Positions 1 to 52,719 of a DNA stretch of 64,000 nucleotides are shown piece by piece. A program made the translations under genes and the position numbers. The stretch lies in the IMG/VR virus record IMGVR_UViG_3300029286_000009, positions 186,001 to 250,000 of that record. One strand, 5' to 3'. The notes beneath the pieces are model-generated. The model saw only the letters and a list, made by a program, of their open reading frames with translations. It was not told the origin of the DNA and searched no databases. Every line of letters starts with the position of its first letter. Positions within the stretch are counted from its first letter, which is position 1.

Positions 1-1067
1 CAGAGTATGACGATATGATTATAGAGAAGGGGACGAGAATATATAAATATTCATATATACATATAATACTATGCCCACTGTGTCTTTTATATAGAGAGCA
101 CCCGCACCCTTGTTTCTGACCTTTCGTTTTCATTTTGCCGCGTCTTTTTCGTTTTCTAGTCTTTATAACCCCTTGTTTTCCCTATTTTTTCTATTTAAGG
201 TCTTTTTGTCCCCGCTTTGACTCTATTTCCCATTTTTGTCTTCCCTGTTTTTACCCTTTCTAACCCTAATCTTCCACTTTAACTTTTCTTTGATTCCTTA
301 ATAGTAAAAACTACTTAACTAGCGTTGTACCAAATCGTATTTTTCATGATTTTTTCTGAAAAAGGTATCTCACTAATATCACTCATCTTCCTTTTTAAGG
401 GTGTCCCGATTTCCCATCCTGACAAAAAATACCTATTTTCACTTATGCGTAATTATTAAAGTAGTCATACGTGAGTATTTGTATATAAACATGCAAATAT
501 ACAAACAATTACTACACACAGTGACACCCTGCCCGCAATTAGCACATTTAACTACGCAACTATATACTATGAAACTGTGGCTGTTGTCTGGATCAGCCTG
601 AACTAAATACCAGTAGGTTGTATTTAATTTGGTTATGTTCTTTTTATTCTCTTGCGAAAGTTGAGGTGACTCCGATGCAAGAGCAACTACACTCAAGTGT
701 TCGAGGGTGTATAAACAGAGAGACGCCAGGCGTTGTTTCCTGTACCCAATAAACAATATGTTACCTGTGCATATAAACACTAGGTGGTATTAGACTCTCA
801 TATAACTCATAACATGGTCAGGGCAGACCTTTAATCCTCTTCGCCGAGGGTATCGTTAAGGGATATAAGATGAGTAAGAATACAAGGACAACGATTTTTT
901 CAAAAACAAATGAATATGTCTTCATTAAAGCTTTTCCCGCGATCTGCCAGTAAAAGGAGCTTGTCTAACTCAGAAAGAGGCGATCGGGAGATTGCTTTAG
1001 CTTTGTACAGCGCCCGCCAAAATTTTCTTTTATACACGCCTGCGTATAATTATATTTATAGTATAAT

Positions 1068-1210
1068 GGAGAGGGAACAAAGGATACCTGTTTACCGTAG
1101 TAGGCGGTACATAAGCTATACAGGTATCATCACCCTCTCCTATAGTAGCTGATAAAACCCGGCTCCCATCGGAGTTCCTCCTAGCTTCAAGGGCTCTGGG
1201 TTTTTCTTTC
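1068..1210 (+). ncRNA. Candidate small structured RNA
   Basis: Nested stems GGAGAGGG/CCCTCTCC, GATACCTGT/ACAGGTATC and TACCG/CGGTA, then a terminator-like stem with a T-run. Confidence 0.4.
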
Positions 1211-1779
1211 TTTGGGTGTGCTAATAGTTACACCCTGCGGTGCGGGATGCCTAAGGTGTGATGGCCCCGCAATCAAGACATATGCACCAGGAAAAGAAGT
1301 GGCTACCTTTCTCGGGGGGAGACCATTTCTTTTCTTGTACCTTTCTTTTCTTACCCACTAACCCAGTTAGTTTGAAGGGGTTATTACAATTATGCACGCG
1401 TGTTTATACTTATAGTAGAATAGAGGCATATCAAATTTTACTGGTGTGTCTCAATTTATACTTGGCAGTAGGAGGTTAAACTGCCAGAAGCTCGTCCCTC
1501 GTATTGTGCGGGGCTGAACGAGTGCAATTGTAAACATGATTTTCTTCTTTGGAAGGAGAAGGGAATGATTATCAGAGTTTACCCGGATGGCACGATCGAT
1601 CGTGTTATTGCGGTAGTGCGGCACTAGATGCCGCGGGGGAGTAGAAAGCACTCCCTGGCAACAGAAACAAAGGCTTTCATTATACCCGCGTGCAATTGTG
1701 TGGGTATAATATATGTAATAATTAATAGGAGAGAGACCCGCCATATAAAGGGGTTCAACGTCTTTTGTAGGAGGTTGTC

Positions 1780-2007
1780 ATGAAGGCTTTCACAATCGCT
1801 GGTGCATTGTTGGATCTCGCAATAACAAAATCGTATGCGGCTGTTCAGAGTGAGGTGAGGAACGAACTCACCAACGCGAAAGATTTCGTTGAGAAGATTA
1901 AATACGAACATGCGGTCAGAAAAGAACTGGCTGTAATCAACAGGCAGTCCGAGGAATTGAGGCGGCGACAGGCAGAGTATGCAGTCGCCCGGAAGTATTT
2001 CGGATGA
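1780..2007 (+). CDS. Hypothetical early protein, 75 aa
   Basis: Strong RBS AGGAGG; downstream of the promoter-like motif at about 1680-1720. Confidence 0.7.
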   Translation: MKAFTIAGALLDLAITKSYAAVQSEVRNELTNAKDFVEKIKYEHAVRKELAVINRQSEELRRRQAEYAVARKYFG

Positions 2008-2186
2008 CACGCCGTAACACGAGATGCAAGCCATTTTAGGCTTCTTCTCGCGTCGCGTGTCTTATTCTATTACGCGTAATGTATTATTATATATTATGAG
2101 TAATAGGACAGGACAATGTGCCTGCTCCTACTCCGGGAATTGATCAGCCTGGAGTTTGAATAAACCTGATCAGGAGGGATTGAGAC

Positions 2187-2399
2187 ATGAGAGCATTGGT
2201 CATAATAGGGGTAATTTTGGCGGTAGGTTACTACTTCTGCGTAGTGCCTATGAAGGCCGAGACCCAGGGGCTGAAGGGACAGATATCCCAGAAGATGGAG
2301 CAGATTCAAAGGTCGTCTCAACGAACGACCTGGGATCGACTGGTGCACCCCGGCACCAGCGATTTGGATCGGGTGATCCAGAAGGTGGCTGGCAAGTGA
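2187..2399 (+). CDS. Small membrane-anchored protein, 70 aa
   Basis: RBS GGAGG, N-terminal hydrophobic helix, followed by a terminator. Confidence 0.7.
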   Translation: MRALVIIGVILAVGYYFCVVPMKAETQGLKGQISQKMEQIQRSSQRTTWDRLVHPGTSDLDRVIQKVAGK

Positions 2400-2413
2400 C
2401 CAGCCATATAAAG

Positions 2414-2450
2414 AGAGTCTCCCCCTCGGTATTACGGGGAGGCTCTTTTT
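2414..2450 (+). terminator. Rho-independent terminator
   Basis: AGAGTCTCCCC...GGGGAGGCTCT stem followed by a T-run. Confidence 0.7.
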
Positions 2451-2504
2451 ATACCCGCACATAGTTAGGTTTTTTTGTTACGCGTGCATTATTATATATT
2501 AGGT

Positions 2505-2870
2505 AATAGTGGGAAGAAGGGACTGACGAGTTCTGGAACCCATAGTGCAGTGAGAGCTCATGACTCTTGTTGCACTCCAGGGGTTGACGACCCCGAGTCT
2601 ACTGGACGCCTTTACAAAGGTGCGTGAGAAACACCAATGTGAAGAAGAGGTAGGCGGGCTAGCAACTCAAAGCTAGCTTAAAGAATCTCTCGGATGGCTC
2701 AGCGTGCTTAACATTGTGTGTCGAGAGGCATACAATGGGGATAGGTTTGGTGCCTATTCTTGGAGCAGTGTGAGTGCAGAGAGTTCCTTCTAGAGTGACA
2801 AGTGGGCAGGTATGTCGCACTTACTCTAGGAGGTAGCAAGAAGACTGAGGGGAAACCTAAGGTCTTTTTG
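2505..2870 (+). ncRNA. Candidate multi-hairpin ncRNA of about 365 nt, family not recognised
   Basis: Promoter-like motif upstream; consecutive G-U-containing stems at 2544-2576, 2712-2737 (GAGA loop), 2738-2760 and 2786-2833; terminator at 2841-2869. Confidence 0.5.
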
Positions 2871-3249
2871 TCCCCGAACGGTTAGGAACGTATAAAACTG
2901 GGGGAATGTAGTAAAAATATAGATAGCCCCGCCCCCTTAACCCTTTGAAATCGCTAGACCTTTAGAAGACTAGATGTCCACCCCAAGGCGATATCCGTTC
3001 CGATGCTTTATCTAAGCCTATCTTATTGTTTTTATTCACTATTTTTCCTCTTCCCTTATCGTTGTTTATACATACCCCACTATATTCTCATCCCTGTTTA
3101 TTTATGCTTACTCCGCTGATCGGTTTTCTCTTATAAAACGCCCCTAAAATTTGTCGGGGCTTTCTGTAAAAGTTAAGGATGCTATTATAACATTATAATC
3201 ATGTTTTTGAGCCTACTTATTTAACCATCTAGCTAACTTCTATATAAAA

Positions 3250-4953
3250 TTGTTTACAAAAGGATACCAATTCATGATCACTTATATACCCCCTAGTGAG
3301 ACTGCTGCGCCAGATACTGATAGTCTACCTATTCCGACTGGTGCAGGTCAAATACCAGTATCAAAAGCTGATGGCTCTTACGAAGCTACCGATGCCGGTG
3401 ATATTAAGGTAAACAGTGTTGCGGCTACTGGGGAGTTGTCTTCTGCCTCTGTGGACACCGATGCGTTGTCCCTAAAAAGTGTAGACGAAAAACAACAAGG
3501 CAGTATTACTCCGGAAAGATTTTATGCAGCAGATGAAGATACTGGGTGTTCCTGTGAATTGCATCCGGTTGATGGTCTGACCCTTGCAACTACACTTATA
3601 GAAGGAAATATTGGGGCAGCAGAGTTAGTAATGCTCAGTTCGTTGTCTGATACTATTTTTTCGTCTAAGATGCTGACTGGTAGATTTGAGGTTCTACCGG
3701 CTTTTTATCAAACCGGGTCAACCCCAGGAACTGCTCAACTTAACGGGACCGGTATAGGGATAGGAATGCAATTTATTTGTCCTGCCACTTGTGCTCCTAC
3801 TGCTTTAAGTTTTCATCTCTCAGCTGTTGGATCAGCGGGTACACTAGGAGTAGCAATTTACGATATAACTACAAGCACAAATTTTACCTGCGGAACTACA
3901 GCGAGTATCTCCGCGACTGGGTGGTTCCGTCATACTTTTACAGCGGTCCAACTCTACGAAGGACATCAGTATGAAATACGAGTAACGTGGGTATCCGGCG
4001 ACCTAACTTTGACTCATCATAGAGTCCTACCTGGTCCTGGATGTGGTCATCCTGATTCGTGCACAGGGTTCTCTACGGCTGACAATTGGTCTACGGAAAC
4101 AGCACTCTTAACAGGTTACAGAGAATCTATCCCCAATTTTGTGTTGAATAGTAATGCTGATCATTGTCCCCAACTTGTTTACGGGGGTAACTCCACCGTT
4201 CTACTTCCTGGCTCCGCTGGAGCAACTACAGCTGCGGGGTTATTCCTGGATTGCTCTGCTTTAGTTGCAGGAACACTTTATTATCTCTATGGGTATTCTA
4301 CAGGAGGTGTTTTAGGGGTTGAGGCGTCGACAGTTGCCCCCACGAATTACGCCTTGGGAGATTTCGAGTATAAATCCACGGATTTAACAAGACGGCTCTT
4401 AGGAATGTTGATTCCAGAAGTTCTGATTGGCACAAGTGTTGGTCCCGTAATGGTATCTGACCGGTTATACGTAGCAAACATCAACCCAAAACTTCGTAAA
4501 ATTGGAAAGGTTAATCCTTATACAGTTCCAACAGCAGGAGCCGAAACAGCAGAGCTAATAGGTGCATATTATAGTTCTCCTGCTTCTTGGCGAGCAGATT
4601 CTGACGATTGGAAGGTAGAGGTATTAGTTATGATGCCTTCGCTCCTAGAAGCTAAGTGTTCGGCACAAACCGGTGCTGCCCCAGTAATCGGTATTGCACT
4701 TGATGGCAAGAAATTTAATCCGCAATTTAGTTCAATCGGAGGTGCAGAGTATGGAAATGGCCCATATGGTCATATCGTAGCCAACTTTTCTGCTTCACTT
4801 TCCAGGGGGAATCATTATCTATACCCAATTGCATGGATACGCTCTGACATTGCAGGACAGACTTTAAACTATATATATATGGTGCGGCTGCGGGGGAGAT
4901 TAACTCAATGGCTACTTTCAATGGACAAATTTTGGCATAAGGAACAAAAATGA
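3250..4953 (+). CDS. Fibre / receptor-binding-like virion protein; C-terminus probably frameshifted, start probably ATG 3274
   Basis: Thr/Gly/Ser-rich; C-terminal domain resembles that of 50644..52719; followed by a paralog of the gene that follows that fibre. Confidence 0.65.
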   Translation: MFTKGYQFMITYIPPSETAAPDTDSLPIPTGAGQIPVSKADGSYEATDAGDIKVNSVAATGELSSASVDTDALSLKSVDEKQQGSITPERFYAADEDTGCSCELHPVDGLTLATTLIEGNIGAAELVMLSSLSDTIFSSKMLTGRFEVLPAFYQTGSTPGTAQLNGTGIGIGMQFICPATCAPTALSFHLSAVGSAGTLGVAIYDITTSTNFTCGTTASISATGWFRHTFTAVQLYEGHQYEIRVTWVSGDLTLTHHRVLPGPGCGHPDSCTGFSTADNWSTETALLTGYRESIPNFVLNSNADHCPQLVYGGNSTVLLPGSAGATTAAGLFLDCSALVAGTLYYLYGYSTGGVLGVEASTVAPTNYALGDFEYKSTDLTRRLLGMLIPEVLIGTSVGPVMVSDRLYVANINPKLRKIGKVNPYTVPTAGAETAELIGAYYSSPASWRADSDDWKVEVLVMMPSLLEAKCSAQTGAAPVIGIALDGKKFNPQFSSIGGAEYGNGPYGHIVANFSASLSRGNHYLYPIAWIRSDIAGQTLNYIYMVRLRGRLTQWLLSMDKFWHKEQK

Positions 4954-5339
4954 ATAAATTAACAGATCAATTCTTGGCACTTAATTTTCCGACGATGATC
5001 GGGCTGTATGAAGGTGCCCCGGTTTTCCTTGGCACTCTTACGCCAGAACAAAGCATCATACGAGATGCTATAATCGCAGCCCAAGACAAAACAGGGGCGG
5101 ACTTAGCTATGCTAAAAGCTCTTCTAACCACTGAACAACAAACTTTATATATTGCCGCCCGGAAAATTTCTGTTCAGGCGGAACGACGTAGCCGTTATAC
5201 AGCAGAAACGGATTCACTTAGAGCTGAAATGGATTATGACTATACTGTAGGTTCGGATGAATGGAATGCAGCTTTGGCAGAATGGAAGGGAAAGGTGGAA
5301 ATGATTAAAGCAGAATTACCTTATCCGGCTTTTGAATAA
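4950..5339 (+). CDS. Fibre assembly chaperone-like protein
   Basis: C-terminus RKI.V..ER..RY..ETD..R...DY.YTVGS.EW..AL.EWK.....IK.ELPYP is clearly paralogous to 52712..53170. Confidence 0.65.
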   Translation: MNKLTDQFLALNFPTMIGLYEGAPVFLGTLTPEQSIIRDAIIAAQDKTGADLAMLKALLTTEQQTLYIAARKISVQAERRSRYTAETDSLRAEMDYDYTVGSDEWNAALAEWKGKVEMIKAELPYPAFE

Positions 5340-15249: not shown

Positions 15250-16534
15250 GTCAAATACCGCCAGCTAAAGCAGGCGGCTTGTAAGTCGTACTTACGATAG
15301 GCTGTTTGACATCAGCCCGACTTCCAGCGGACATGCCCTTGGAAGCAAGGTAGTTTAGGCGAATATTTTTACTAGCGTTGAGGTCTGCATTGTGTTGAAA
15401 ACCACAAGACTTACATACAAACCAAGACTGGCTCTGCCGGTTCCTTCTCGCTATGTATCCGCAACGGGAACACTTCTGGCTTGTGTATCGAGGATCAACA
15501 TATTCAATCGCAATGCTCCTCATCCTGCCTTTGTAATCCAAGAAAGAACGAAGTCTCTCAAAAGACCAAGAGTGGATTCTTCGCCGTTGTTTTCTTTTCG
15601 CCTTTACTCTGCCTCGAATATCAACAAGATCCTCAAGGACAACGACAGAACCGGGGACAACTGTATCAACTATTCGCCTGGAAATTACGTGGTCACAATC
15701 CTTTCGGAAGCGGTTTTCCTTCTGCGAAAGCTTTTTAAGGTGTCTTTTCGCAGAATCAGTGCCTTTCGATTGGAGAGAGCGTTTGATTCTAAAGTATTTC
15801 TTGGTGGTTTCTTTCCATTGTCGTTCACCAATAAAGTCGGCATTACTGGTGACTGCGGGACGGTTAACTCCGAGGTCAATTCCTACGGTGATGTTCGTGG
15901 GCTCAACAACTGCATCGTCTGTAGAGACAACAACGTGCAAAAAGACTCTTCCGTCTCGCTTGAAGCAGAGGTCAGAGGAGCAGACTTTCCAGGAAAGATA
16001 TCTGCGGTAGTAGTCACAGACTATCAACGTAATGGGGATTCTTCCCTCGACAGAAGAAAGAAAAGCGGTTCCCTTATCAAGTCTAATCGTGGCGGATCTA
16101 GCATCATATCTAACTGTGAGGGCTTTCCCTGTAGGGCAAGAAGCCTTTTTACCTTTTTTCAACTTTGCTTTAGCAGATTTCAGAGCTTCTGTTGCTTTCA
16201 TTCTAGCGGAACACACGAGTTGACTCGGAAGGGACGTGGTTTCTCTTTCAAAACGATAGGTAGCATGGTGCAAATCAACTCCGTTGACCCTTGGGGCTTC
16301 CCATCCTGTTTGACAGACCCTAGCAAAAGACTGCGAAAATTGTTCTGCGGTCTCTTTGAGAGCTTGCAATTTGTCACTTTTAACAGGAAGTTTGAGAGTT
16401 ACGGTTTGCACGTTTGCTCCTTCATATACAAGGTAAAGCATCCGCAACTAAAAGTCAAGGCACAAATACTAAGAAAGGAGGAGCCGGCTTCCTCTGCCGC
16501 CTAAAGACGGCAGTCTCCGCCGGGACAAATCTTT
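15250..16534 (-). mobile_element. IS200/IS605-family TnpB-only (non-autonomous) element
   Basis: Terminal hairpins; plus-strand ends GTCAA at 15250 and ATGA at 16535; interrupts a reconstructable small ORF. Confidence 0.85.
15251..16447 (-). CDS. tnpB: TnpB RNA-guided nuclease
   Basis: RuvC motifs GIDLG, VLEDL and NADLNAS; zinc finger CSRC/CKSC; YTSQKCS. Confidence 0.92.
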   Translation of the reverse strand: MRMLYLVYEGANVQTVTLKLPVKSDKLQALKETAEQFSQSFARVCQTGWEAPRVNGVDLHHATYRFERETTSLPSQLVCSARMKATEALKSAKAKLKKGKKASCPTGKALTVRYDARSATIRLDKGTAFLSSVEGRIPITLIVCDYYRRYLSWKVCSSDLCFKRDGRVFLHVVVSTDDAVVEPTNITVGIDLGVNRPAVTSNADFIGERQWKETTKKYFRIKRSLQSKGTDSAKRHLKKLSQKENRFRKDCDHVISRRIVDTVVPGSVVVLEDLVDIRGRVKAKRKQRRRIHSWSFERLRSFLDYKGRMRSIAIEYVDPRYTSQKCSRCGYIARRNRQSQSWFVCKSCGFQHNADLNASKNIRLNYLASKGMSAGSRADVKQPIVSTTYKPPALAGGI

Positions 16535-29103: not shown

Positions 29104-29621
29104 GGGGCACACAGGTATCGACAGACGTTATGAGTAGATTTGTATTGGTGGTCGGTGTGAGTGGTACCGTAAATCATTCGAATTATAAATGCCGAAGATA
29201 ATTCTTTCGACATGCTCTCAGCTTTTTGTGAAGCCGACCGTAAGGTTAGTGTAGCATACGCTGGTTAATAGGGCGGAGTTCCCAGTAACTTATCAACAGA
29301 AAACTGGGTGGCGGAGGCAAGTGGGTTTTATACCTGCTTCCTCTCCTGGTTACGAGGCTAAACTGACCTGGTGGAGGCACGCGGGAAACCGCGTCCCCTA
29401 AATCCTATGCAAGTAGGTATCCTAGTGTCAGGCATTAGGATAGAGATGGGTAGGGTAATCGCCACCGTGCGGGAAACCAAACCTTCTAGCCCGCAAAAGT
29501 CAGCGGCGGGGTCTCGAAAAGGCTGGCAAACTCTCTGTCGGGAGTATAAATATGGACTACACCATCTAAATTTACATTTCGAAAGGCGGACTGGATCTGG
29601 GTTCGACTCCCAGGTGCTCCA
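29104..29621 (+). ncRNA. ssrA: tmRNA
   Basis: Acceptor stem GGGGCAC/GTGCTCC-A with G3-U70; T-arm CTGGGTTCGACTCCCAG; 5' GGTATCGAC; resume context ATAAAT-GCC at 29191; tag ORF to 29268. Confidence 0.92.
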
Positions 29622-29898
29622 TAAAATTGTCTTATAACAAAGCATTGCTCCCGAAGACATACAAGATTTGTATAATAAACATTGTAATTGGGTCGATGTC
29701 AAAGGTTTTAGGCATCTCCGATCGCCAACTGCGACGTATCCGAAAGATGCATATTAGCTGATCTGCCATGTGTAGAAACAGTAAAGTTAACGTCAACAGT
29801 GCTAGGCGGGGCGTTGATGGTTGATACTAGTCTAGCGGGGGAATAGTTAACGTGACTGTTCCCCCATTTCATATGTAAAGAAGGTAAGGAGAGGTTAA

Positions 29899-38992: not shown

Positions 38993-39226
38993 GTCAACCA
39001 CCCCACGCCTAAAGGCGGGGGCTTGAAAGAGCCTTGGTTGACTAGGGGGCATTAATTTGCAGCAGTTGAGAACCAGAAATACATACACACCCCAAAATAT
39101 TCCGCACGTTTCGGGCGACTGTGGTTGGACATTAAAAGTCCTGGTGGGTAGGGACGGTGTGTCCAGCTTAAAAACGGTTTCCAACAATCCCGATGCGGTC
39201 CCAACCTCAGAAAAGAGGAGCGAAAC
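38993..39226 (+). ncRNA. omega-RNA (HEARO-like) scaffold
   Basis: About 230-nt structured leader of iscB with GTCAACC/GGTTGAC closing stem. Confidence 0.8.
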
Positions 39227-40435
39227 TTGAGAGTATTTGTTAAAAATCAAAAAGGTAATCCATTAATGCCGACTACTCCAAGAGGAGCAAGAGTGCTTCT
39301 CTGTGCAGGGAAAGCGGTAGTGGTTAAACGAACACCGTTCACTATCCAACTCACAGCAGCAACTGGCGAGACAAAACAGCCTGTCGTCTTAGGTGTAGAC
39401 AGCGGCTTCACTCACGTCGGTTTATCTGCGGTATCAGACAGGGCTGAATTGTATGCGGCAGAAGTCTTATTACGCACCGACATGGTTAAGCTCAATGCCG
39501 AACGAGCAATGTATCGACGTAACAGGCGAAGTCGCAAGACATGGTACCGTCAACCGAGGTTCCTTAATAGGTCGAAACCGAAGGGTTGGTTGGCACCTAG
39601 TATTCAGCACAAACTAGACTCACATAAGAAGTTGATCGACAAGGTAAAAGGACTGCTGCCAATCACCAAGGTTGTTATTGAGGTTGCCGCATTTGATATT
39701 CAGAAGATTAAAAATCCTGAGATATTCGGCGAAGGCTACCAGAATGGTGAGCAGTCCGGTTTTTGGAATGTCAGGGAGTATGTATTTCACAGGGACAGCC
39801 ACAAGTGCCAAGCTCCAAAGTGTAATCATAAAGACAAAATACTTAACGTCCATCATGTTGTTAGCCGGCAGACAGGCGGTGATAGACCCCATAATCTAAT
39901 TACACTTTGTGAAACCTGTCACAAGAGTCACCATAAAAAAGCACTAGACCTTAAGATCAATGCGGGAAACGGATTCAAAGCAGAAACGTTCATGTCAATG
40001 GTAAGGTGGAGATTAACTCAGGACACAGGCTCACAACACACATTTGGTTATATCACAAAAACAAATCGCATTGCTGCACGTTTAGAGAAGTCTCATATCA
40101 ACGATGCTTTCATTATTGCAGGTGGTGGACAGAATCGGACCACAGCATTAACGATCAAACAAGTAAGAAAGTGCAATCGCAAACTATACAAAGGCAGCCG
40201 AAGCCACATCAGGAATACTGCCCCACGTGAAATATTAGGTTATCGACGCTTCGATAAGGTGAAGTGGGGTCGTGTTGAAGCCTTTATTTTCGGAAGACGA
40301 TCCACTGGCAATTTCGATATCAGGGACGGCAACGGGAAAAGTCTCCACAAATCTATTAACGCAAAACACATTAGGTTGCTGGAAAGAGCTTCAACAAGCT
40401 TGATTTCCAGAACCTCACTTCCTCCCCAGTGCTAA
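39227..40435 (+). CDS. iscB: IscB RNA-guided nuclease
   Basis: PLMP, RuvC-I GVDSG, RRNRRSRK bridge helix, IEVAAFD, HNH (VHH...N...CETCH), SHINDA. Confidence 0.95.
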   Translation: MRVFVKNQKGNPLMPTTPRGARVLLCAGKAVVVKRTPFTIQLTAATGETKQPVVLGVDSGFTHVGLSAVSDRAELYAAEVLLRTDMVKLNAERAMYRRNRRSRKTWYRQPRFLNRSKPKGWLAPSIQHKLDSHKKLIDKVKGLLPITKVVIEVAAFDIQKIKNPEIFGEGYQNGEQSGFWNVREYVFHRDSHKCQAPKCNHKDKILNVHHVVSRQTGGDRPHNLITLCETCHKSHHKKALDLKINAGNGFKAETFMSMVRWRLTQDTGSQHTFGYITKTNRIAARLEKSHINDAFIIAGGGQNRTTALTIKQVRKCNRKLYKGSRSHIRNTAPREILGYRRFDKVKWGRVEAFIFGRRSTGNFDIRDGNGKSLHKSINAKHIRLLERASTSLISRTSLPPQC

Positions 40436-50643: not shown

Positions 50644-52719
50644 ATGTCAACAGTTATTCAAGTTAAAAGAGGTACTGAGGCACAGATATTAGAAAACCCA
50701 ATGGCAGTTGGGGAGTTAGCCCTATGTACCTCAACTTGCTCAATTTTTTCTTATAACGGTGTAACCAAATGCCTGATTGGTAAAGCAATCGTAGATACTT
50801 ATGACAATATGACTACTTACAGCGGTGTAAGTGGCCGCTTCTTCTTCAGTTCTGACACGGGAAATTTGTATGTTCATACAGGAACAGTCTGGTCTGGTAT
50901 TTCTTTATTAGACAACTATATAACTTCTTCAACTTTATCCACAACCAGTGGCAATATTGTATCACAAATAATCATCTCACATGGCAGTTTACAGAATTTA
51001 AACACTGATGATCACACACAGTATTTCTTAGCAGACGGTTCTAGAGAATTATCTGGTAATTTACTACCAGAGATGACTGGTGCTAGTGGTGTAGTGTCAA
51101 CGCGGGACTTAGGCAGTCCTACCCAGAAAATAAATAATATTTATGTGCATGATGTCCGTATGGGTGGGGAATCGTTATATGTGAATGATAAACTCATTCT
51201 GTATGATACATCACCTGAATTAGTTTTTAGAACAGATGCGAATCAGGATTTATCTCTAAAGACGTACGGACTTGGTGACATAAACCTAATATCAGATCAT
51301 GCTGATGTGGGTTTAGTTGCCTACGACACTTTTTCTGTTATAGCTGAAACAGTAGATTTATGGGCGGACGTCAAAGTTACTGGAAAGGTTTCATCTTCAG
51401 AAGGATTCCAGATCAATGAAGCTGCTCCAGCAGGTCAGTTTTTGAGGTCTAATGGGACAGTGTTTTTTGGTGGAACAATTCAAACTGGGGATATCCCCGA
51501 TATTTCTGCAAACTATATAACTCCTGCTAGATTAACTACTGTGTCGGGTGATCTCATTACTCAAATCCCTTCATTAGAAGAGTATGCAACCCAAAGTTGG
51601 GCAAATGGACAATTCATTACACCAGTTGTTCTGACAACTACTAGCGGAGATATAGTAACACAAATTCCGAGTTTAACAAATTATGTTACTACGTCTACTC
51701 TATCTACTGTAAGTGGGAATATAATGACGCAGATTCCTGATGTGGTGGGAGGAAGATTGGATTATGTTTCAACAACCCAGATAAAATGGTCATTTTTAAA
51801 TTCAAATCAGGTACGAATTTTCAACAATTCTACTTTTCTCGAAGAGGTTGTTAACTGTTCTTCTGAGCCTACTCTTTCATCTACAGGTAATGATATAGGT
51901 GGTGTAGCAATAACCTACGATACAGTTTATGATATATTTGCGGTTTACACTAGTGCTACTACTATCGCATTGGCTGTTGCTAAATGGGCTGTATCTACTG
52001 CTGGTTCTAGTGCAAGATATGCTGCGTGGGTTACGAGTACGGATTATAAAGTAGGGGATAAAGTGTCTAACGGTGGTTCCTATTACCCATGTATTGCGGC
52101 ACATACATCTGATACTTTTGCTACAGATTTAGCTGCTGGAAAATGGGGACCAGCCATGGCTGGTACCGGAGATCTTTTGGGGTTGGATATACTTGGTGGT
52201 TCTCCTGTTTTTTCGAATACCGGTGCATGGCGGGGGTATAGATGGTTAGGGACAGTTACAACTTTTAATGATTCGGGATCGAAGTTTAAGAGTAGCACAA
52301 CGCAATTATCTATTTCAAATTATTATAATGCTAAATTATTTAGGATTGGTCCTGCAAATGTAACTGCATCTTGGACGTATGATACTGCTGTTTGGAGGGA
52401 AAGCAATACAGGAACTGGGCAGACAAGAGCTGTTCATGCCCCATGTAGAACACAGTATGTTACCGGAGTAATAAGTGAGCATACGAATACTGCTGTTGGT
52501 GGGGCAATTTGGCTTGGTATCGCCGTAGACTCATCTACTACTAATACTGTTACTGCTTCTCACGCTTTTTCTAGCACTTGGTTTTGGCTTGTAAATCCCA
52601 TTTCTTTTTCATTGGCTAAAGGCTATCATTATATTACGTCATTAGAATATCCACAGGCTGGAGTTAATACGATTATGGGTGGTGGCTACTTACAAACCCA
52701 TATAATGATACTTGCATAA
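50644..52719 (+). CDS. Fibre / receptor-binding protein with Mtd-N-like anchor and CBM5/12-like insert
   Basis: IQVKRG...GELA; TTxSG repeats; AW....Y.VGDKV...G..Y.C..AHTS. Confidence 0.7.
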   Translation: MSTVIQVKRGTEAQILENPMAVGELALCTSTCSIFSYNGVTKCLIGKAIVDTYDNMTTYSGVSGRFFFSSDTGNLYVHTGTVWSGISLLDNYITSSTLSTTSGNIVSQIIISHGSLQNLNTDDHTQYFLADGSRELSGNLLPEMTGASGVVSTRDLGSPTQKINNIYVHDVRMGGESLYVNDKLILYDTSPELVFRTDANQDLSLKTYGLGDINLISDHADVGLVAYDTFSVIAETVDLWADVKVTGKVSSSEGFQINEAAPAGQFLRSNGTVFFGGTIQTGDIPDISANYITPARLTTVSGDLITQIPSLEEYATQSWANGQFITPVVLTTTSGDIVTQIPSLTNYVTTSTLSTVSGNIMTQIPDVVGGRLDYVSTTQIKWSFLNSNQVRIFNNSTFLEEVVNCSSEPTLSSTGNDIGGVAITYDTVYDIFAVYTSATTIALAVAKWAVSTAGSSARYAAWVTSTDYKVGDKVSNGGSYYPCIAAHTSDTFATDLAAGKWGPAMAGTGDLLGLDILGGSPVFSNTGAWRGYRWLGTVTTFNDSGSKFKSSTTQLSISNYYNAKLFRIGPANVTASWTYDTAVWRESNTGTGQTRAVHAPCRTQYVTGVISEHTNTAVGGAIWLGIAVDSSTTNTVTASHAFSSTWFWLVNPISFSLAKGYHYITSLEYPQAGVNTIMGGGYLQTHIMILA

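What the first reader, a model, noticed from the sequence alone, without database searches (positions are those of the whole stretch)
2505..2870. Self-contained multi-stem RNA of about 365 nt with no recognisable family
Seen: own promoter-like motif and terminator; 13-bp stem at 2544-2576, 11-bp stem capped by a GAGA (GNRA) loop at 2712-2737, 9-bp stem at 2738-2760 and a long stem at 2786-2833, all with G-U pairs. I do not see RNase P, SRP, tmRNA or group I intron cores. A 38-codon ORF (2560..2676) lies inside but has a weak RBS.
Basis: partly seen in the sequence, partly recalled or inferred. Interest (0 to 1): 0.65.

Follow-up and report, generated by a model that had tools for sequence, protein, structure and literature searches.

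The report
Orphan structured RNA in huge phage
A 260-kb lake phage carries a roughly 360-base gene that seems to make a tightly folded non-coding RNA of no known family, and a related 545-kb phage has a larger folded RNA at the same position, so this is probably a new phage RNA whose function is still unknown.

Summary
Window 2505-2870 (+) folds at -153 kcal/mol, z = -7.6 against shuffles. The opposite strand gives only z = -1.8. 25 of the 125 predicted pairs are G-U. No Rfam family matches, even at E <= 10.

The window is part of a 259.7-kb uncultured freshwater jumbo phage. The RNA is the last unit of a 1.8-kb module (about 1036-2876) holding five similar terminator-plus-promoter cassettes, two small membrane-type ORFs and other folded segments.

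The only relative with this module is a 545-kb phage (terminase 61% identical). At the syntenic spot it has the same promoter cassette and the same 3' flank, enclosing an ORF-free unit of about 650 nt. That unit folds even better (z = -10.8) and is the most stable intergenic fold in its genome. The two RNA bodies cannot be aligned by sequence, and covariance models give only weak matches. The 38-codon ORF is not conserved.

Best reading: an independently transcribed phage non-coding RNA that acts through its fold, probably as a protein-binding decoy or scaffold. There is no expression data, no covariation, and only two loci. It is a new orphan among large phage RNAs, and its function is open.

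The parts
2466..2512 (+). Promoter cassette P5: a T-run left by the upstream terminator, a TTACGCGTG box, an AT-rich spacer and GGTAATAG. The inferred transcription start is about 2510-2516.
   Evidence: Five similar cassettes lie at about 1036, 1392, 1683, 2070 and 2478, all on the + strand. The cassette in front of the G001 RNA aligns with P5. It is not listed by the sigma-70 consensus scan.
2509..2543 (+). H1, a two-tier 5' hairpin
   Evidence: MFE and centroid fold
2544..2576 (+). H2, a 13-bp hairpin. Its loop carries the self-complementary UCAUGA and the AUG of the 38-codon ORF.
2580..2594 (+). H3, a 6-bp GC-rich hairpin
2597..2655 (+). H4, a long three-tier hairpin with a 9-nt loop
2656..2679 (+). 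H5, an 8-bp hairpin whose two arms both contain GCUAGC
2687..2783 (+). Three-way-junction domain: three stacked 5-bp tiers carrying H6 (2712-2737, 11 bp, GAGA loop) and H7 (2738-2760, 9 bp)
   Evidence: The segment 2684-2836, which spans this domain and H8, folds at -69.4 kcal/mol, z -6.84.
2786..2833 (+). H8, a long hairpin of 12 bp, a bulge, then 8 bp
2837..2870 (+). Terminator-like 3' hairpin with a GAAA loop, followed by UUUUU. An upstream A-rich arm can pair with the U-run.
   Evidence: Not reported by the terminator scan.
2858..2876 (+). 19-nt motif TAAGGTCTTTTTGTCCCCG overlapping the RNA's 3' end. An exact second copy lies at 196-214.
   Evidence: A 95%-identical copy follows a terminator hairpin in G001 at 125,634.
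2877..2912 (+). Conserved 3' flank: ACGGTT..GAACGTA..AAA.TGGGGGAATGTA
   Evidence: The best local alignment between the G000 and G001 loci falls here. In IMG/VR the motif occurs only in G001 (the scan may leave out the window's own record), and in the metagenome scan the only true match is this phage.
2560..2676 (+). Internal 38-codon ORF, probably not translated
   Evidence: No PHROG hit. No similar ORF in the G001 unit. Called as a gene in 1 of 7 assemblies.
1036..2462 (+). The rest of the multi-promoter module: cassettes P1-P4; folded units 1068-1345 and 1420-1700; small ORFs 1565-1627 (20 aa), 1780-2007 (75 aa) and 2187-2399 (70 aa); strong terminator 2413-2450

Best explanation
Window about 2510-2870 (+) is a stand-alone gene for a non-coding RNA of about 360 nt in an uncultured freshwater jumbo phage. 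It is probably read from its own promoter cassette, the last of five similar terminator-promoter cassettes in a 1.8-kb module of small, probably early, genes. It ends at a weak hairpin-plus-U terminator.

The RNA folds into eight helical elements, including a three-way junction, and about 68% of its bases are paired. I infer that it acts in trans through its shape rather than its sequence. The most likely role is binding and sequestering or scaffolding a host or phage protein (a decoy or scaffold) during infection.

Shown here: the fold, its strand specificity, the lack of coding signal, the conserved flanks, and a positional counterpart in a related phage. Inferred: transcription, the early timing, and the protein-binding mechanism.
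For: 1. Fold: z -7.59 on the + strand against -1.84 on the - strand, and the centroid equals the MFE. 25 of 125 pairs are G-U and G exceeds C. This means selection at the RNA level on this strand.
2. Genome background: it is among the most stable ORF-free windows of the genome and the most strand-asymmetric.
3. A related 545-kb phage (G001) has a syntenic module. The promoter cassette and 3' flank align. Between them lies a 651-nt ORF-poor unit with -270 kcal/mol, z -10.8. It is the most stable of 1086 intergenic windows in that genome. Its 27-bp helix holds 8 G-U pairs by my own reading of the sequence.
4. Not a leader: in G001 no same-strand gene follows the unit.
5. Not coding: the 3' 190 nt have no ORF, and the 38-aa ORF has no relatives and no G001 counterpart.
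6. No retroelement or guide-RNA partner: no reverse transcriptase in the genome, and IscB/HEARO and TnpB lie far away.
7. Shape rather than sequence: the two bodies are unalignable (z 0.6-0.9), yet both are extreme folders.
8. Precedent: abundant large ORF-less phage transcripts of unknown role exist, for example in ICP1 (PMC7567579).
Against: - No evidence of transcription: none of the 7 runs that hold the sequence is an RNA run.
- No covariation: all recovered copies are 100% identical, and the only relative cannot be aligned.
- Covariance models of the two halves find nothing convincing in G001: 9.1 bits for the 3' half; 14.6 and 12.5 bits for the 5' half, and only with filters off on a 3.2-kb target. 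Homology of the two RNAs is therefore unproven, and the bodies could be unrelated cargo.
- The promoter does not match the sigma-70 consensus and the terminator is weak.
- The decoy/scaffold mechanism rests on analogy only. No repeated loop motif or known protein-binding motif was found.
Confidence: 0.55

Rival explanations
1. Swappable cargo. The unit is one slot of a hyperplastic region bounded by PeSL-like composite terminator-promoter cassettes. The G000 and G001 bodies are unrelated sequences exchanged by recombination between cassettes. The RNA may be a recent acquisition with a lineage-specific function, or none.
For: The flanks are conserved while the bodies are unalignable and differ in length, 366 against about 650 nt. 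The cassettes are repeated within the module and conserved between phages. PeSLs do exactly this in T4-like phages (PMC2839356, PMC4122927).
Against: Both bodies are extreme, strand-specific folders at the same slot, which random cargo would not explain. The small ORFs of the module are also barely alignable, so plain divergence can account for the unalignable bodies. This rival is compatible with the body being a functional RNA.
Confidence: 0.2
2. A small-protein gene. The unit is an mRNA for the 38-aa peptide (2560-2676) with a long structured 3' UTR, like the two small-ORF units upstream.
For: The ORF starts about 50 nt after the inferred start site, similar to the 5' UTR lengths of the 75-aa and 70-aa units. 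One gene caller predicted it (L021).
Against: It has a weak Shine-Dalgarno sequence (GAGAG, 3-nt spacing), whereas the neighbouring ORFs have GGAGG. The AUG is buried in the loop of a 13-bp hairpin. There is no PHROG hit and no similar ORF in the G001 unit. Six of seven assemblies' gene calls omit it. The most strongly folded part (2684-2836, z -6.8) lies outside the ORF.
Confidence: 0.07
3. A cis-acting leader. The folded RNA plus terminator would be a riboswitch-like or antitermination (put-like) element controlling read-through into genes 3274-5339.
For: The structured RNA ends in a weak, possibly conditional terminator, and same-strand genes follow in G000.
Against: About 400 nt of unstructured, CU-rich sequence and another terminator-like hairpin (about 3138-3168) separate it from the next gene. 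In G001 the unit is followed by the end of a converging gene block, not by a same-strand gene. The downstream 559-aa gene has no homologue in G001, and its one relative lies in a different context. No riboswitch family matched.
Confidence: 0.06
4. A replication-related transcript. A structured primer or activator RNA for an origin, as with ColE1 RNA II or the T4 and T7 origins that depend on promoters upstream of an easily unwound stretch.
For: Several tandem promoters sit in a 3-kb gene-poor region, a highly folded transcript is present, and strand-biased AT/CT-rich tracts flank the module (100-450 and 2925-3130).
Against: The downstream tract would give pyrimidine-rich RNA, which is poor for a stable R-loop. 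The tract is not conserved in G001, where the downstream sequence is purine-rich on the RNA strand. GC skew in the window follows gene orientation, with no turn at the locus. No antisense regulator or initiator-binding repeats were seen.
Confidence: 0.06

Closest known systems
GOLLD and ROOL (large ornate RNAs often carried by phages; Rfam families)
   Same: Large (hundreds of nt), intricately folded, ORF-free and phage-encoded, with unknown function. GOLLD was first seen in lake metagenomes (named in PMC7567579; cryo-EM preprint 10.1101/2024.12.08.627333).
   Different: No match to either covariance model even at E <= 10. No tRNA genes nearby: ARAGORN finds none in the 64-kb window. Only two loci are known and there is no covariation support. 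At 366 nt it is smaller than either family.
ICP1 phage ncRNA of about 800 nt (its most abundant transcript)
   Same: A stand-alone transcript in an ORF-less gap of a lytic phage, with no tRNA association and an unknown role (PMC7567579).
   Different: The ICP1 RNA is shown by RNA-seq, whereas this one has no expression data. There is no sequence relationship: blastn against 50,697 phage records finds nothing.
PeSL cassettes (promoter-early stem-loop) of T4-like hyperplastic regions
   Same: Repeated composite terminator-plus-promoter motifs flank short variable units. The flanks are conserved between related phages while the content differs (PMC2839356, PMC4122927).
   Different: The motif sequence is different (a CGCGTG box plus an AT-rich stretch ending in GTAATAG) and the phage lineage is unrelated (terminase no more than 26% identical to any cultured phage). 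Here the last slot holds a folded non-coding unit rather than an ORF. Recombination at these cassettes has not been shown.
phi29 pRNA and adenovirus VA RNA (from my own knowledge; analogies only)
   Same: Viral RNAs read from their own early promoter. Relatives keep the fold and function while the sequence drifts almost beyond alignment. They act by binding a protein: the packaging motor for pRNA, PKR for VA RNA.
   Different: No pRNA model match. This phage has a T4-type large terminase, which needs no pRNA. A shared fold between the G000 and G001 RNAs is not demonstrated.

Membership tests
Any Rfam 15 family (RNase P, SRP, tmRNA, 6S, group I/II introns, GOLLD, ROOL, OLE, HEARO, pRNA, riboswitches, self-cleaving ribozymes) | Score at or above the family's gathering threshold against its covariance model | tested here: not met
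   cmscan of the whole window finds only HEARO (38993-39205) and tmRNA (29104-29624). At E <= 10 over 2000-3300, the best hit inside the RNA is SNORA17 at 17 bits, E 2.1. The G001 counterpart also has no hit.
GOLLD / ROOL | Frequent adjacency to tRNA genes in phage genomes | tested here: not met
   ARAGORN finds no tRNA in the 64-kb window.
IscB/TnpB guide RNA (HEARO / omega RNA) | Lies directly beside, or overlapping the end of, the nuclease gene | tested here: not met
   IscB with its HEARO RNA is at 38993-40435 and TnpB at 15251-16447. The nearest is more than 12 kb away.
Retron / DGR / group II intron RNA | A reverse transcriptase encoded with the RNA | tested here: not met
   No RVT_1 match anywhere in the 259.7-kb genome, and the control genomes did ring. 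The RNA is single-copy with no template/variable repeat pair.
PeSL-like regulatory cassette region | Repeated composite terminator-promoter motifs flanking short variable units, conserved between related phages | tested here: met
   Five cassettes lie in 1.5 kb, plus one at G000 176.3 kb. The same cassettes are in G001. The unit contents are not alignable.
PeSL-like regulatory cassette region | The cassettes act as early promoters and as recombination points | not testable with these tools
   There is no expression data and only two genomes to compare.
Intrinsic (Rho-independent) terminator at the 3' end | A GC-rich hairpin immediately followed by a U-run | tested here: inconclusive
   The hairpin at 2837-2870 has a GAAA loop and five U. 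Its core is only 4+3 bp, and the terminator scan did not list it. The G001 unit ends in a clearer 12-bp hairpin.
Sigma-70-type promoter | TTGACA and TATAAT hexamers 16-18 nt apart | tested here: not met
   The consensus scan does not list 2466-2512. It lists an internal match at 2708-2736, and the total number of matches is at the chance level (14 found against 11.3 expected). No phage sigma factor was found. The T7-type polymerase search also found nothing, but its control genomes did not ring either, so it says nothing about absence.
Small-protein gene | An ORF conserved in relatives, with a ribosome-binding site | tested here: not met
   The Shine-Dalgarno sequence is weak and the AUG lies inside hairpin H2.
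Cis-regulatory leader / riboswitch | A conserved same-strand gene directly downstream | tested here: not met
   G001 has no same-strand gene after the unit. In G000 the next gene starts about 400 nt later.
CsrB/RsmZ-type protein sponge | Many GGA motifs displayed in hairpin loops | tested here: not met
   The loop sequences (GACG, UCAU, GAC, CGUGAGAAA, AACUCAAA, GAGA, UUGGU, GGUA, GAAA) hold no GGA.

The most novel reading that the evidence does not exclude
A lineage of huge freshwater phages keeps a fast-evolving, very large structured RNA at a fixed slot closing a multi-promoter module of small genes: 366 nt in the 260-kb phage and about 650 nt in the 545-kb phage. Selection acts on the architecture and not on the sequence. 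That would make it a new class of ornate phage RNA working as a structural decoy or scaffold against a host protein, a bacterial-virus counterpart of adenovirus VA RNA.
Probability: 0.25. Interest if true: 0.75.

Novelty: new member of a known kind. Interest (0 to 1): 0.55.

Why it matters
Large structured RNAs of unknown function, such as GOLLD, ROOL and the ICP1 RNA, are among the least understood products of phage genomes, and huge phages have hardly been searched for them.

This locus offers a clean, bounded candidate. It has conserved promoter and 3' flank 'handles' in two distant huge phages, each enclosing one of the strongest RNA folds in its genome. If the two RNAs are orthologues, they show an RNA kept for its shape while its sequence drifts beyond alignment. 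That would point to a protein-binding decoy or scaffold role in infection.

The conserved flanks also give a practical way to fish further members out of new lake metagenomes. More members would make covariation tests possible.

Tried and rejected
**Searches for homologues**
- blastn of the RNA and of its G001 counterpart against 50,697 phage records: no match.
- blastn of the RNA against five related IMG/VR records: only chance hits of 14-20 nt. One of them lay inside a coding region.
- IMG/VR pattern scans returned only G001. The patterns were the 19-mer, the 3'-flank motif, a hairpin motif shared by eye, and the CT-rich post-terminator motif.
- The single metagenome scan with the 3'-flank motif returned the phage itself plus seven loci. 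The five I printed or matched to those are chance matches inside an amidotransferase-like coding region; two (L080, L082) I filed as chance because they have no similarity to window 1-3300.
- Protein word searches with the 70-aa, 559-aa and 246-aa neighbours found only the phage's own proteins, plus one 55% relative of the 559-aa protein in a tail-fibre-like gene cluster without the module.
- The search for related loci with the 567-aa reading of the downstream ORF (the 559-aa gene from its upstream TTG start) found nothing.
- All seven assemblies carrying the locus are identical over the RNA (one has a single mismatch elsewhere in 1-3300). Contigs from four runs show no variant inside the RNA and no junction that skips the module. 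Microdiversity therefore gives no covariation, and there is no sign of excision between the 19-nt repeats.

**Tests of homology between the two RNAs**
- Pairwise alignment of the two RNA bodies: z 0.6 (global) and 0.9 (local) against shuffles. Shared 7-mers number 35 against 22 expected and are not collinear.
- Single-sequence covariance models R1 (2684-2836) and R2 (2508-2682): nothing in 1.14 Mb of related phage DNA. With filters off, only weak hits appear inside the G001 RNA. This is inconclusive.

**Other checks**
- Extended similarity around the two 19-mer copies: none.
- Host assignment through IscB relatives: hits of at most 67% identity spread over many phyla, so uninformative.
- Closest cultured phage by terminase: at most 26% identity.
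- Alternative genetic codes were not tried, because long standard-code ORFs show that the genome uses table 11.

Full report
**Where the window comes from.** The window is bases 186,001-250,000 of a 259,732-bp linear IMG/VR virus record that is estimated to be 96% complete.
- It carries a T4-type large terminase, Bro-N, a DNA methylase, IscB with its HEARO RNA, TnpB and a tmRNA.
- Near-identical DNA occurs in lake and freshwater metagenomes from four studies.
- The terminase is at most 26% identical to that of any cultured phage. This is therefore an uncultured, deep-branching jumbo phage, and its host is unknown (one search gave no answer).

**The observation.**
- *Fold and strand.* Window 2505-2870 on the + strand folds at -153 kcal/mol, against -112.8 +/- 5.3 for dinucleotide shuffles. 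That is z = -7.59, and the centroid fold is identical to the minimum-energy fold. The reverse complement gives -95 kcal/mol and z = -1.84.
The full fold has eight helical elements, including a three-way junction at 2687-2783.
- *Pairing and composition.* 125 base pairs cover 68% of the bases. 25 of the pairs are G-U, and G (31%) far exceeds C (19%). G-U pairs become C-A mismatches on the other strand. That explains the strand asymmetry and points to selection on an RNA read from the + strand.
- *Genome background.* Among 200-nt windows in ORF-free gaps of the whole phage genome, this locus ranks third of 425 by energy and shows the largest difference between strands. It had the lowest z-score in the part of the genome that I shuffled.

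**No known family.** cmscan against the 4227 Rfam families finds nothing here at gathering thresholds. With E up to 10 it returns only chance-level hits.

**Coding.** The 38-codon ORF at 2560-2676 exists, but several things argue against translation:
- Its AUG lies in the loop of the 13-bp hairpin.
- Its only Shine-Dalgarno-like letters are GAGAG, 3 nt upstream, whereas the two small ORFs just upstream have GGAGG at normal spacing.
- It has no PHROG match.
- Six of seven assemblies' gene calls omit it.
- The best-folded part, 2684-2836 (z -6.84), lies beyond the ORF, where no ORF of 30 codons or more exists on the + strand.

**Surroundings.**
- *Gene-poor stretch.* Gene callers leave G000 185,526-187,779 empty, which corresponds to window 1-1779 and a little sequence before it.
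- *Promoter cassettes.* From about 1036 to 2876 lies a module with five similar cassettes. Each has a T-run from a preceding hairpin, then a (T/A)ACGCGTG-like box, an AT-rich stretch and (A/G)GTAATAG or TATAAT. They sit at about 1036, 1392, 1683, 2070 and 2478, all on the + strand. A sixth lies at G000 176.3 kb.
- *Units they precede.* These are folded units at 1068-1345 (z -3.9) and 1420-1700 (z -4.6, with a 20-codon ORF behind a strong Shine-Dalgarno sequence); ORFs of 75 aa and 70 aa with hydrophobic N-termini; and finally the RNA.
- *Upstream terminator.* A strong terminator at 2413-2450 separates the 70-aa unit from the RNA's cassette.
- *Caveats.* The sigma-70 consensus scan does not recognise these cassettes. 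It lists an internal match at 2708-2736, but the total count is at the chance level. The phage encodes no detectable sigma-70 region 2. The search for a T7-type polymerase also found nothing, but its controls did not ring, so it is uninformative. The 3' hairpin of the RNA (2837-2870, GAAA loop, five U) is weak, and the terminator scan did not list it.

**Relatives.**
- *No microdiversity.* Every copy of the locus I could recover is identical over the RNA.
- *Related records.* A terminase search of IMG/VR gave five related records, and I fetched four of them in full. Only one, a 545,322-bp phage (G001, terminase 61% identical), shares the module.
- *Synteny.* tblastn synteny places the counterpart of G000 184-195 kb at G001 about 420-444 kb, in reversed orientation. 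A gene-poor stretch lies there, at 433.9-436.4 kb. Read on the minus strand, it has the same architecture: the same cassettes, small ORFs with hydrophobic N-termini, and a last ORF-poor unit.
- *Conserved flanks.* The cassette in front of that unit aligns with P5. The sequence after it aligns with window 2877-2912 (ACGGTT..GAACGTA..AAA.TGGGGGAATGTA), and this is the best local alignment between the two loci. A further block, window 1325-1425, is 75% identical.
- *The G001 unit.* It is 651 nt and folds at -270.4 kcal/mol, z = -10.8. It is the most stable of 1086 intergenic windows in that genome. It has no Rfam match. It includes a 27-bp helix with eight G-U pairs (sequence, pairs read by me).
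- *No downstream gene.* The unit abuts the end of a converging gene block, so no same-strand gene follows it. The unit therefore cannot be a leader.

**Are the two RNAs homologous?** This is not demonstrable.
- The bodies do not align better than shuffles: z 0.6 global and 0.9 local. Shared 7-mers are near the chance number and are not collinear.
- A covariance model of 2684-2836 finds nothing.
- A model of 2508-2682 finds nothing with default filters in 1.14 Mb. With filters off it gives 14.6 and 12.5 bits inside the G001 RNA on the correct strand. That is too weak to count.
- The small ORFs of the two modules are also barely alignable; the best pair has E 0.05. Divergence between the phages is therefore close to saturation for anything not strongly constrained. 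Unalignable bodies fit either diverged orthologues or swapped cargo.

**No further members.** I could not find any more members of this locus:
- four IMG/VR pattern scans;
- the one metagenome scan;
- two blastn searches of cultured phages;
- three protein word searches with neighbouring genes.

**What it most likely is.** The evidence supports an independently transcribed, non-coding, highly folded RNA gene kept at a fixed slot in two distant huge phages.

Several mechanisms can be set aside:
- Retroelement RNA: no reverse transcriptase in the genome.
- Nuclease guide RNA: the nucleases are far away and carry their own RNA.
- Leader or riboswitch: no conserved downstream gene.
- CsrB-like sponge: no GGA motifs in the loops.
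- A replication-primer role cannot be excluded, but nothing specific supports it.

Three things lead me to infer that the RNA works through its shape, most plausibly as a protein-binding decoy or scaffold made early in infection. Foldedness persists while sequence does not. Few long single-stranded stretches are available for base pairing. And the unit sits among small host-takeover-type genes behind repeated promoters.

The long helices (H8 here, the 27-bp helix in G001) are the right size for RNase III, so processing is likely; that rests on my own knowledge and was not tested here. The mechanism is an inference by analogy with phi29 pRNA and adenovirus VA RNA.

**Compared with what is known.** The module resembles the PeSL composite promoter-terminator cassettes of T4-like hyperplastic regions (PMC2839356, PMC4122927). 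The RNA itself belongs with the orphan large phage RNAs: GOLLD, ROOL and the ICP1 transcript of about 800 nt (PMC7567579). It is not a member of any of those families.

**Verdict.**
- It is a new orphan of a known kind. There are only two loci, no expression data and no covariation.
- Interest is 0.55. I give probability 0.25 to the more novel reading, a fast-evolving class of giant structural RNAs in huge phages.

Noticed in passing
window 196-214 and 2858-2876; G001 125,634-125,652 (L007 1501-1519): An exact 19-nt direct repeat, TAAGGTCTTTTTGTCCCCG, lies 2662 nt apart in the window. A 95%-identical copy follows a terminator hairpin at an unrelated place in the 545-kb relative. There is no extended similarity around the copies and no contig that skips the interval. 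It looks like a conserved signal at transcript 3' ends or a protein-binding site, not an attachment site.
   Followed up: partly
window 1036-2462: Four more promoter cassettes precede other folded units: 1068-1345 (z -3.9) and 1420-1700 (z -4.6). There is also a 20-codon ORF (1565-1627) with a strong Shine-Dalgarno sequence, and two small ORFs (75 aa and 70 aa) with hydrophobic N-termini and no relatives anywhere.
   Followed up: partly
window 100-450 and 2925-3130: Strongly pyrimidine-rich (C/T) tracts on the + strand flank the module. They fold no better, or worse, than shuffles (z 0 to +1.5). The tract after the RNA is not conserved in G001.
   Followed up: no
window 2556-2562: The loop of the 13-bp hairpin H2 carries the self-complementary hexamer UCAUGA, a possible kissing-loop dimerisation site. 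It also contains the AUG of the 38-codon ORF. No palindromic loop was seen in the G001 RNA.
   Followed up: no
window 29104-29624: A phage-encoded tmRNA scores 61.9 bits against Rfam. It spans 521 nt against a 374-position model, and ARAGORN predicts an unusual tag peptide (ASSPGYEAKLTWWRHAGNRVP).
   Followed up: no
window 38993-40435 and 15251-16447 (-): A complete HEARO RNA (111 bits) lies directly upstream of an IscB gene (RRXRR + HNH). A TnpB-like gene (OrfB_IS605 + Cas12f1-like TNB) is also present. IscB relatives of at most 67% identity occur in many bacterial and archaeal phyla.
   Followed up: partly
window 50644-52719: This protein has an Mtd_N (major tropism determinant) N-terminus and a CBM_5_12 domain, yet the genome holds no reverse transcriptase (RVT_1). 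It is therefore apparently not part of a diversity-generating retroelement.
   Followed up: partly
G000 180,900-181,230; 143,300-143,600; 178,000-178,400; G001 450,433-450,683 (+): Other very stable folds lie in ORF-free gaps of both phages, for example G001 450,483 at -97.5 kcal/mol per 200 nt. These may be further non-coding RNAs and were not examined.
   Followed up: no
G000 183,290-184,030 (L083 4071-4811): A 246-aa protein with Zeta-toxin/AAA_33 kinase-type Pfam domains lies 4.5 kb upstream of the RNA. It is conserved at 31-34% identity in G001 and G004.
   Followed up: no
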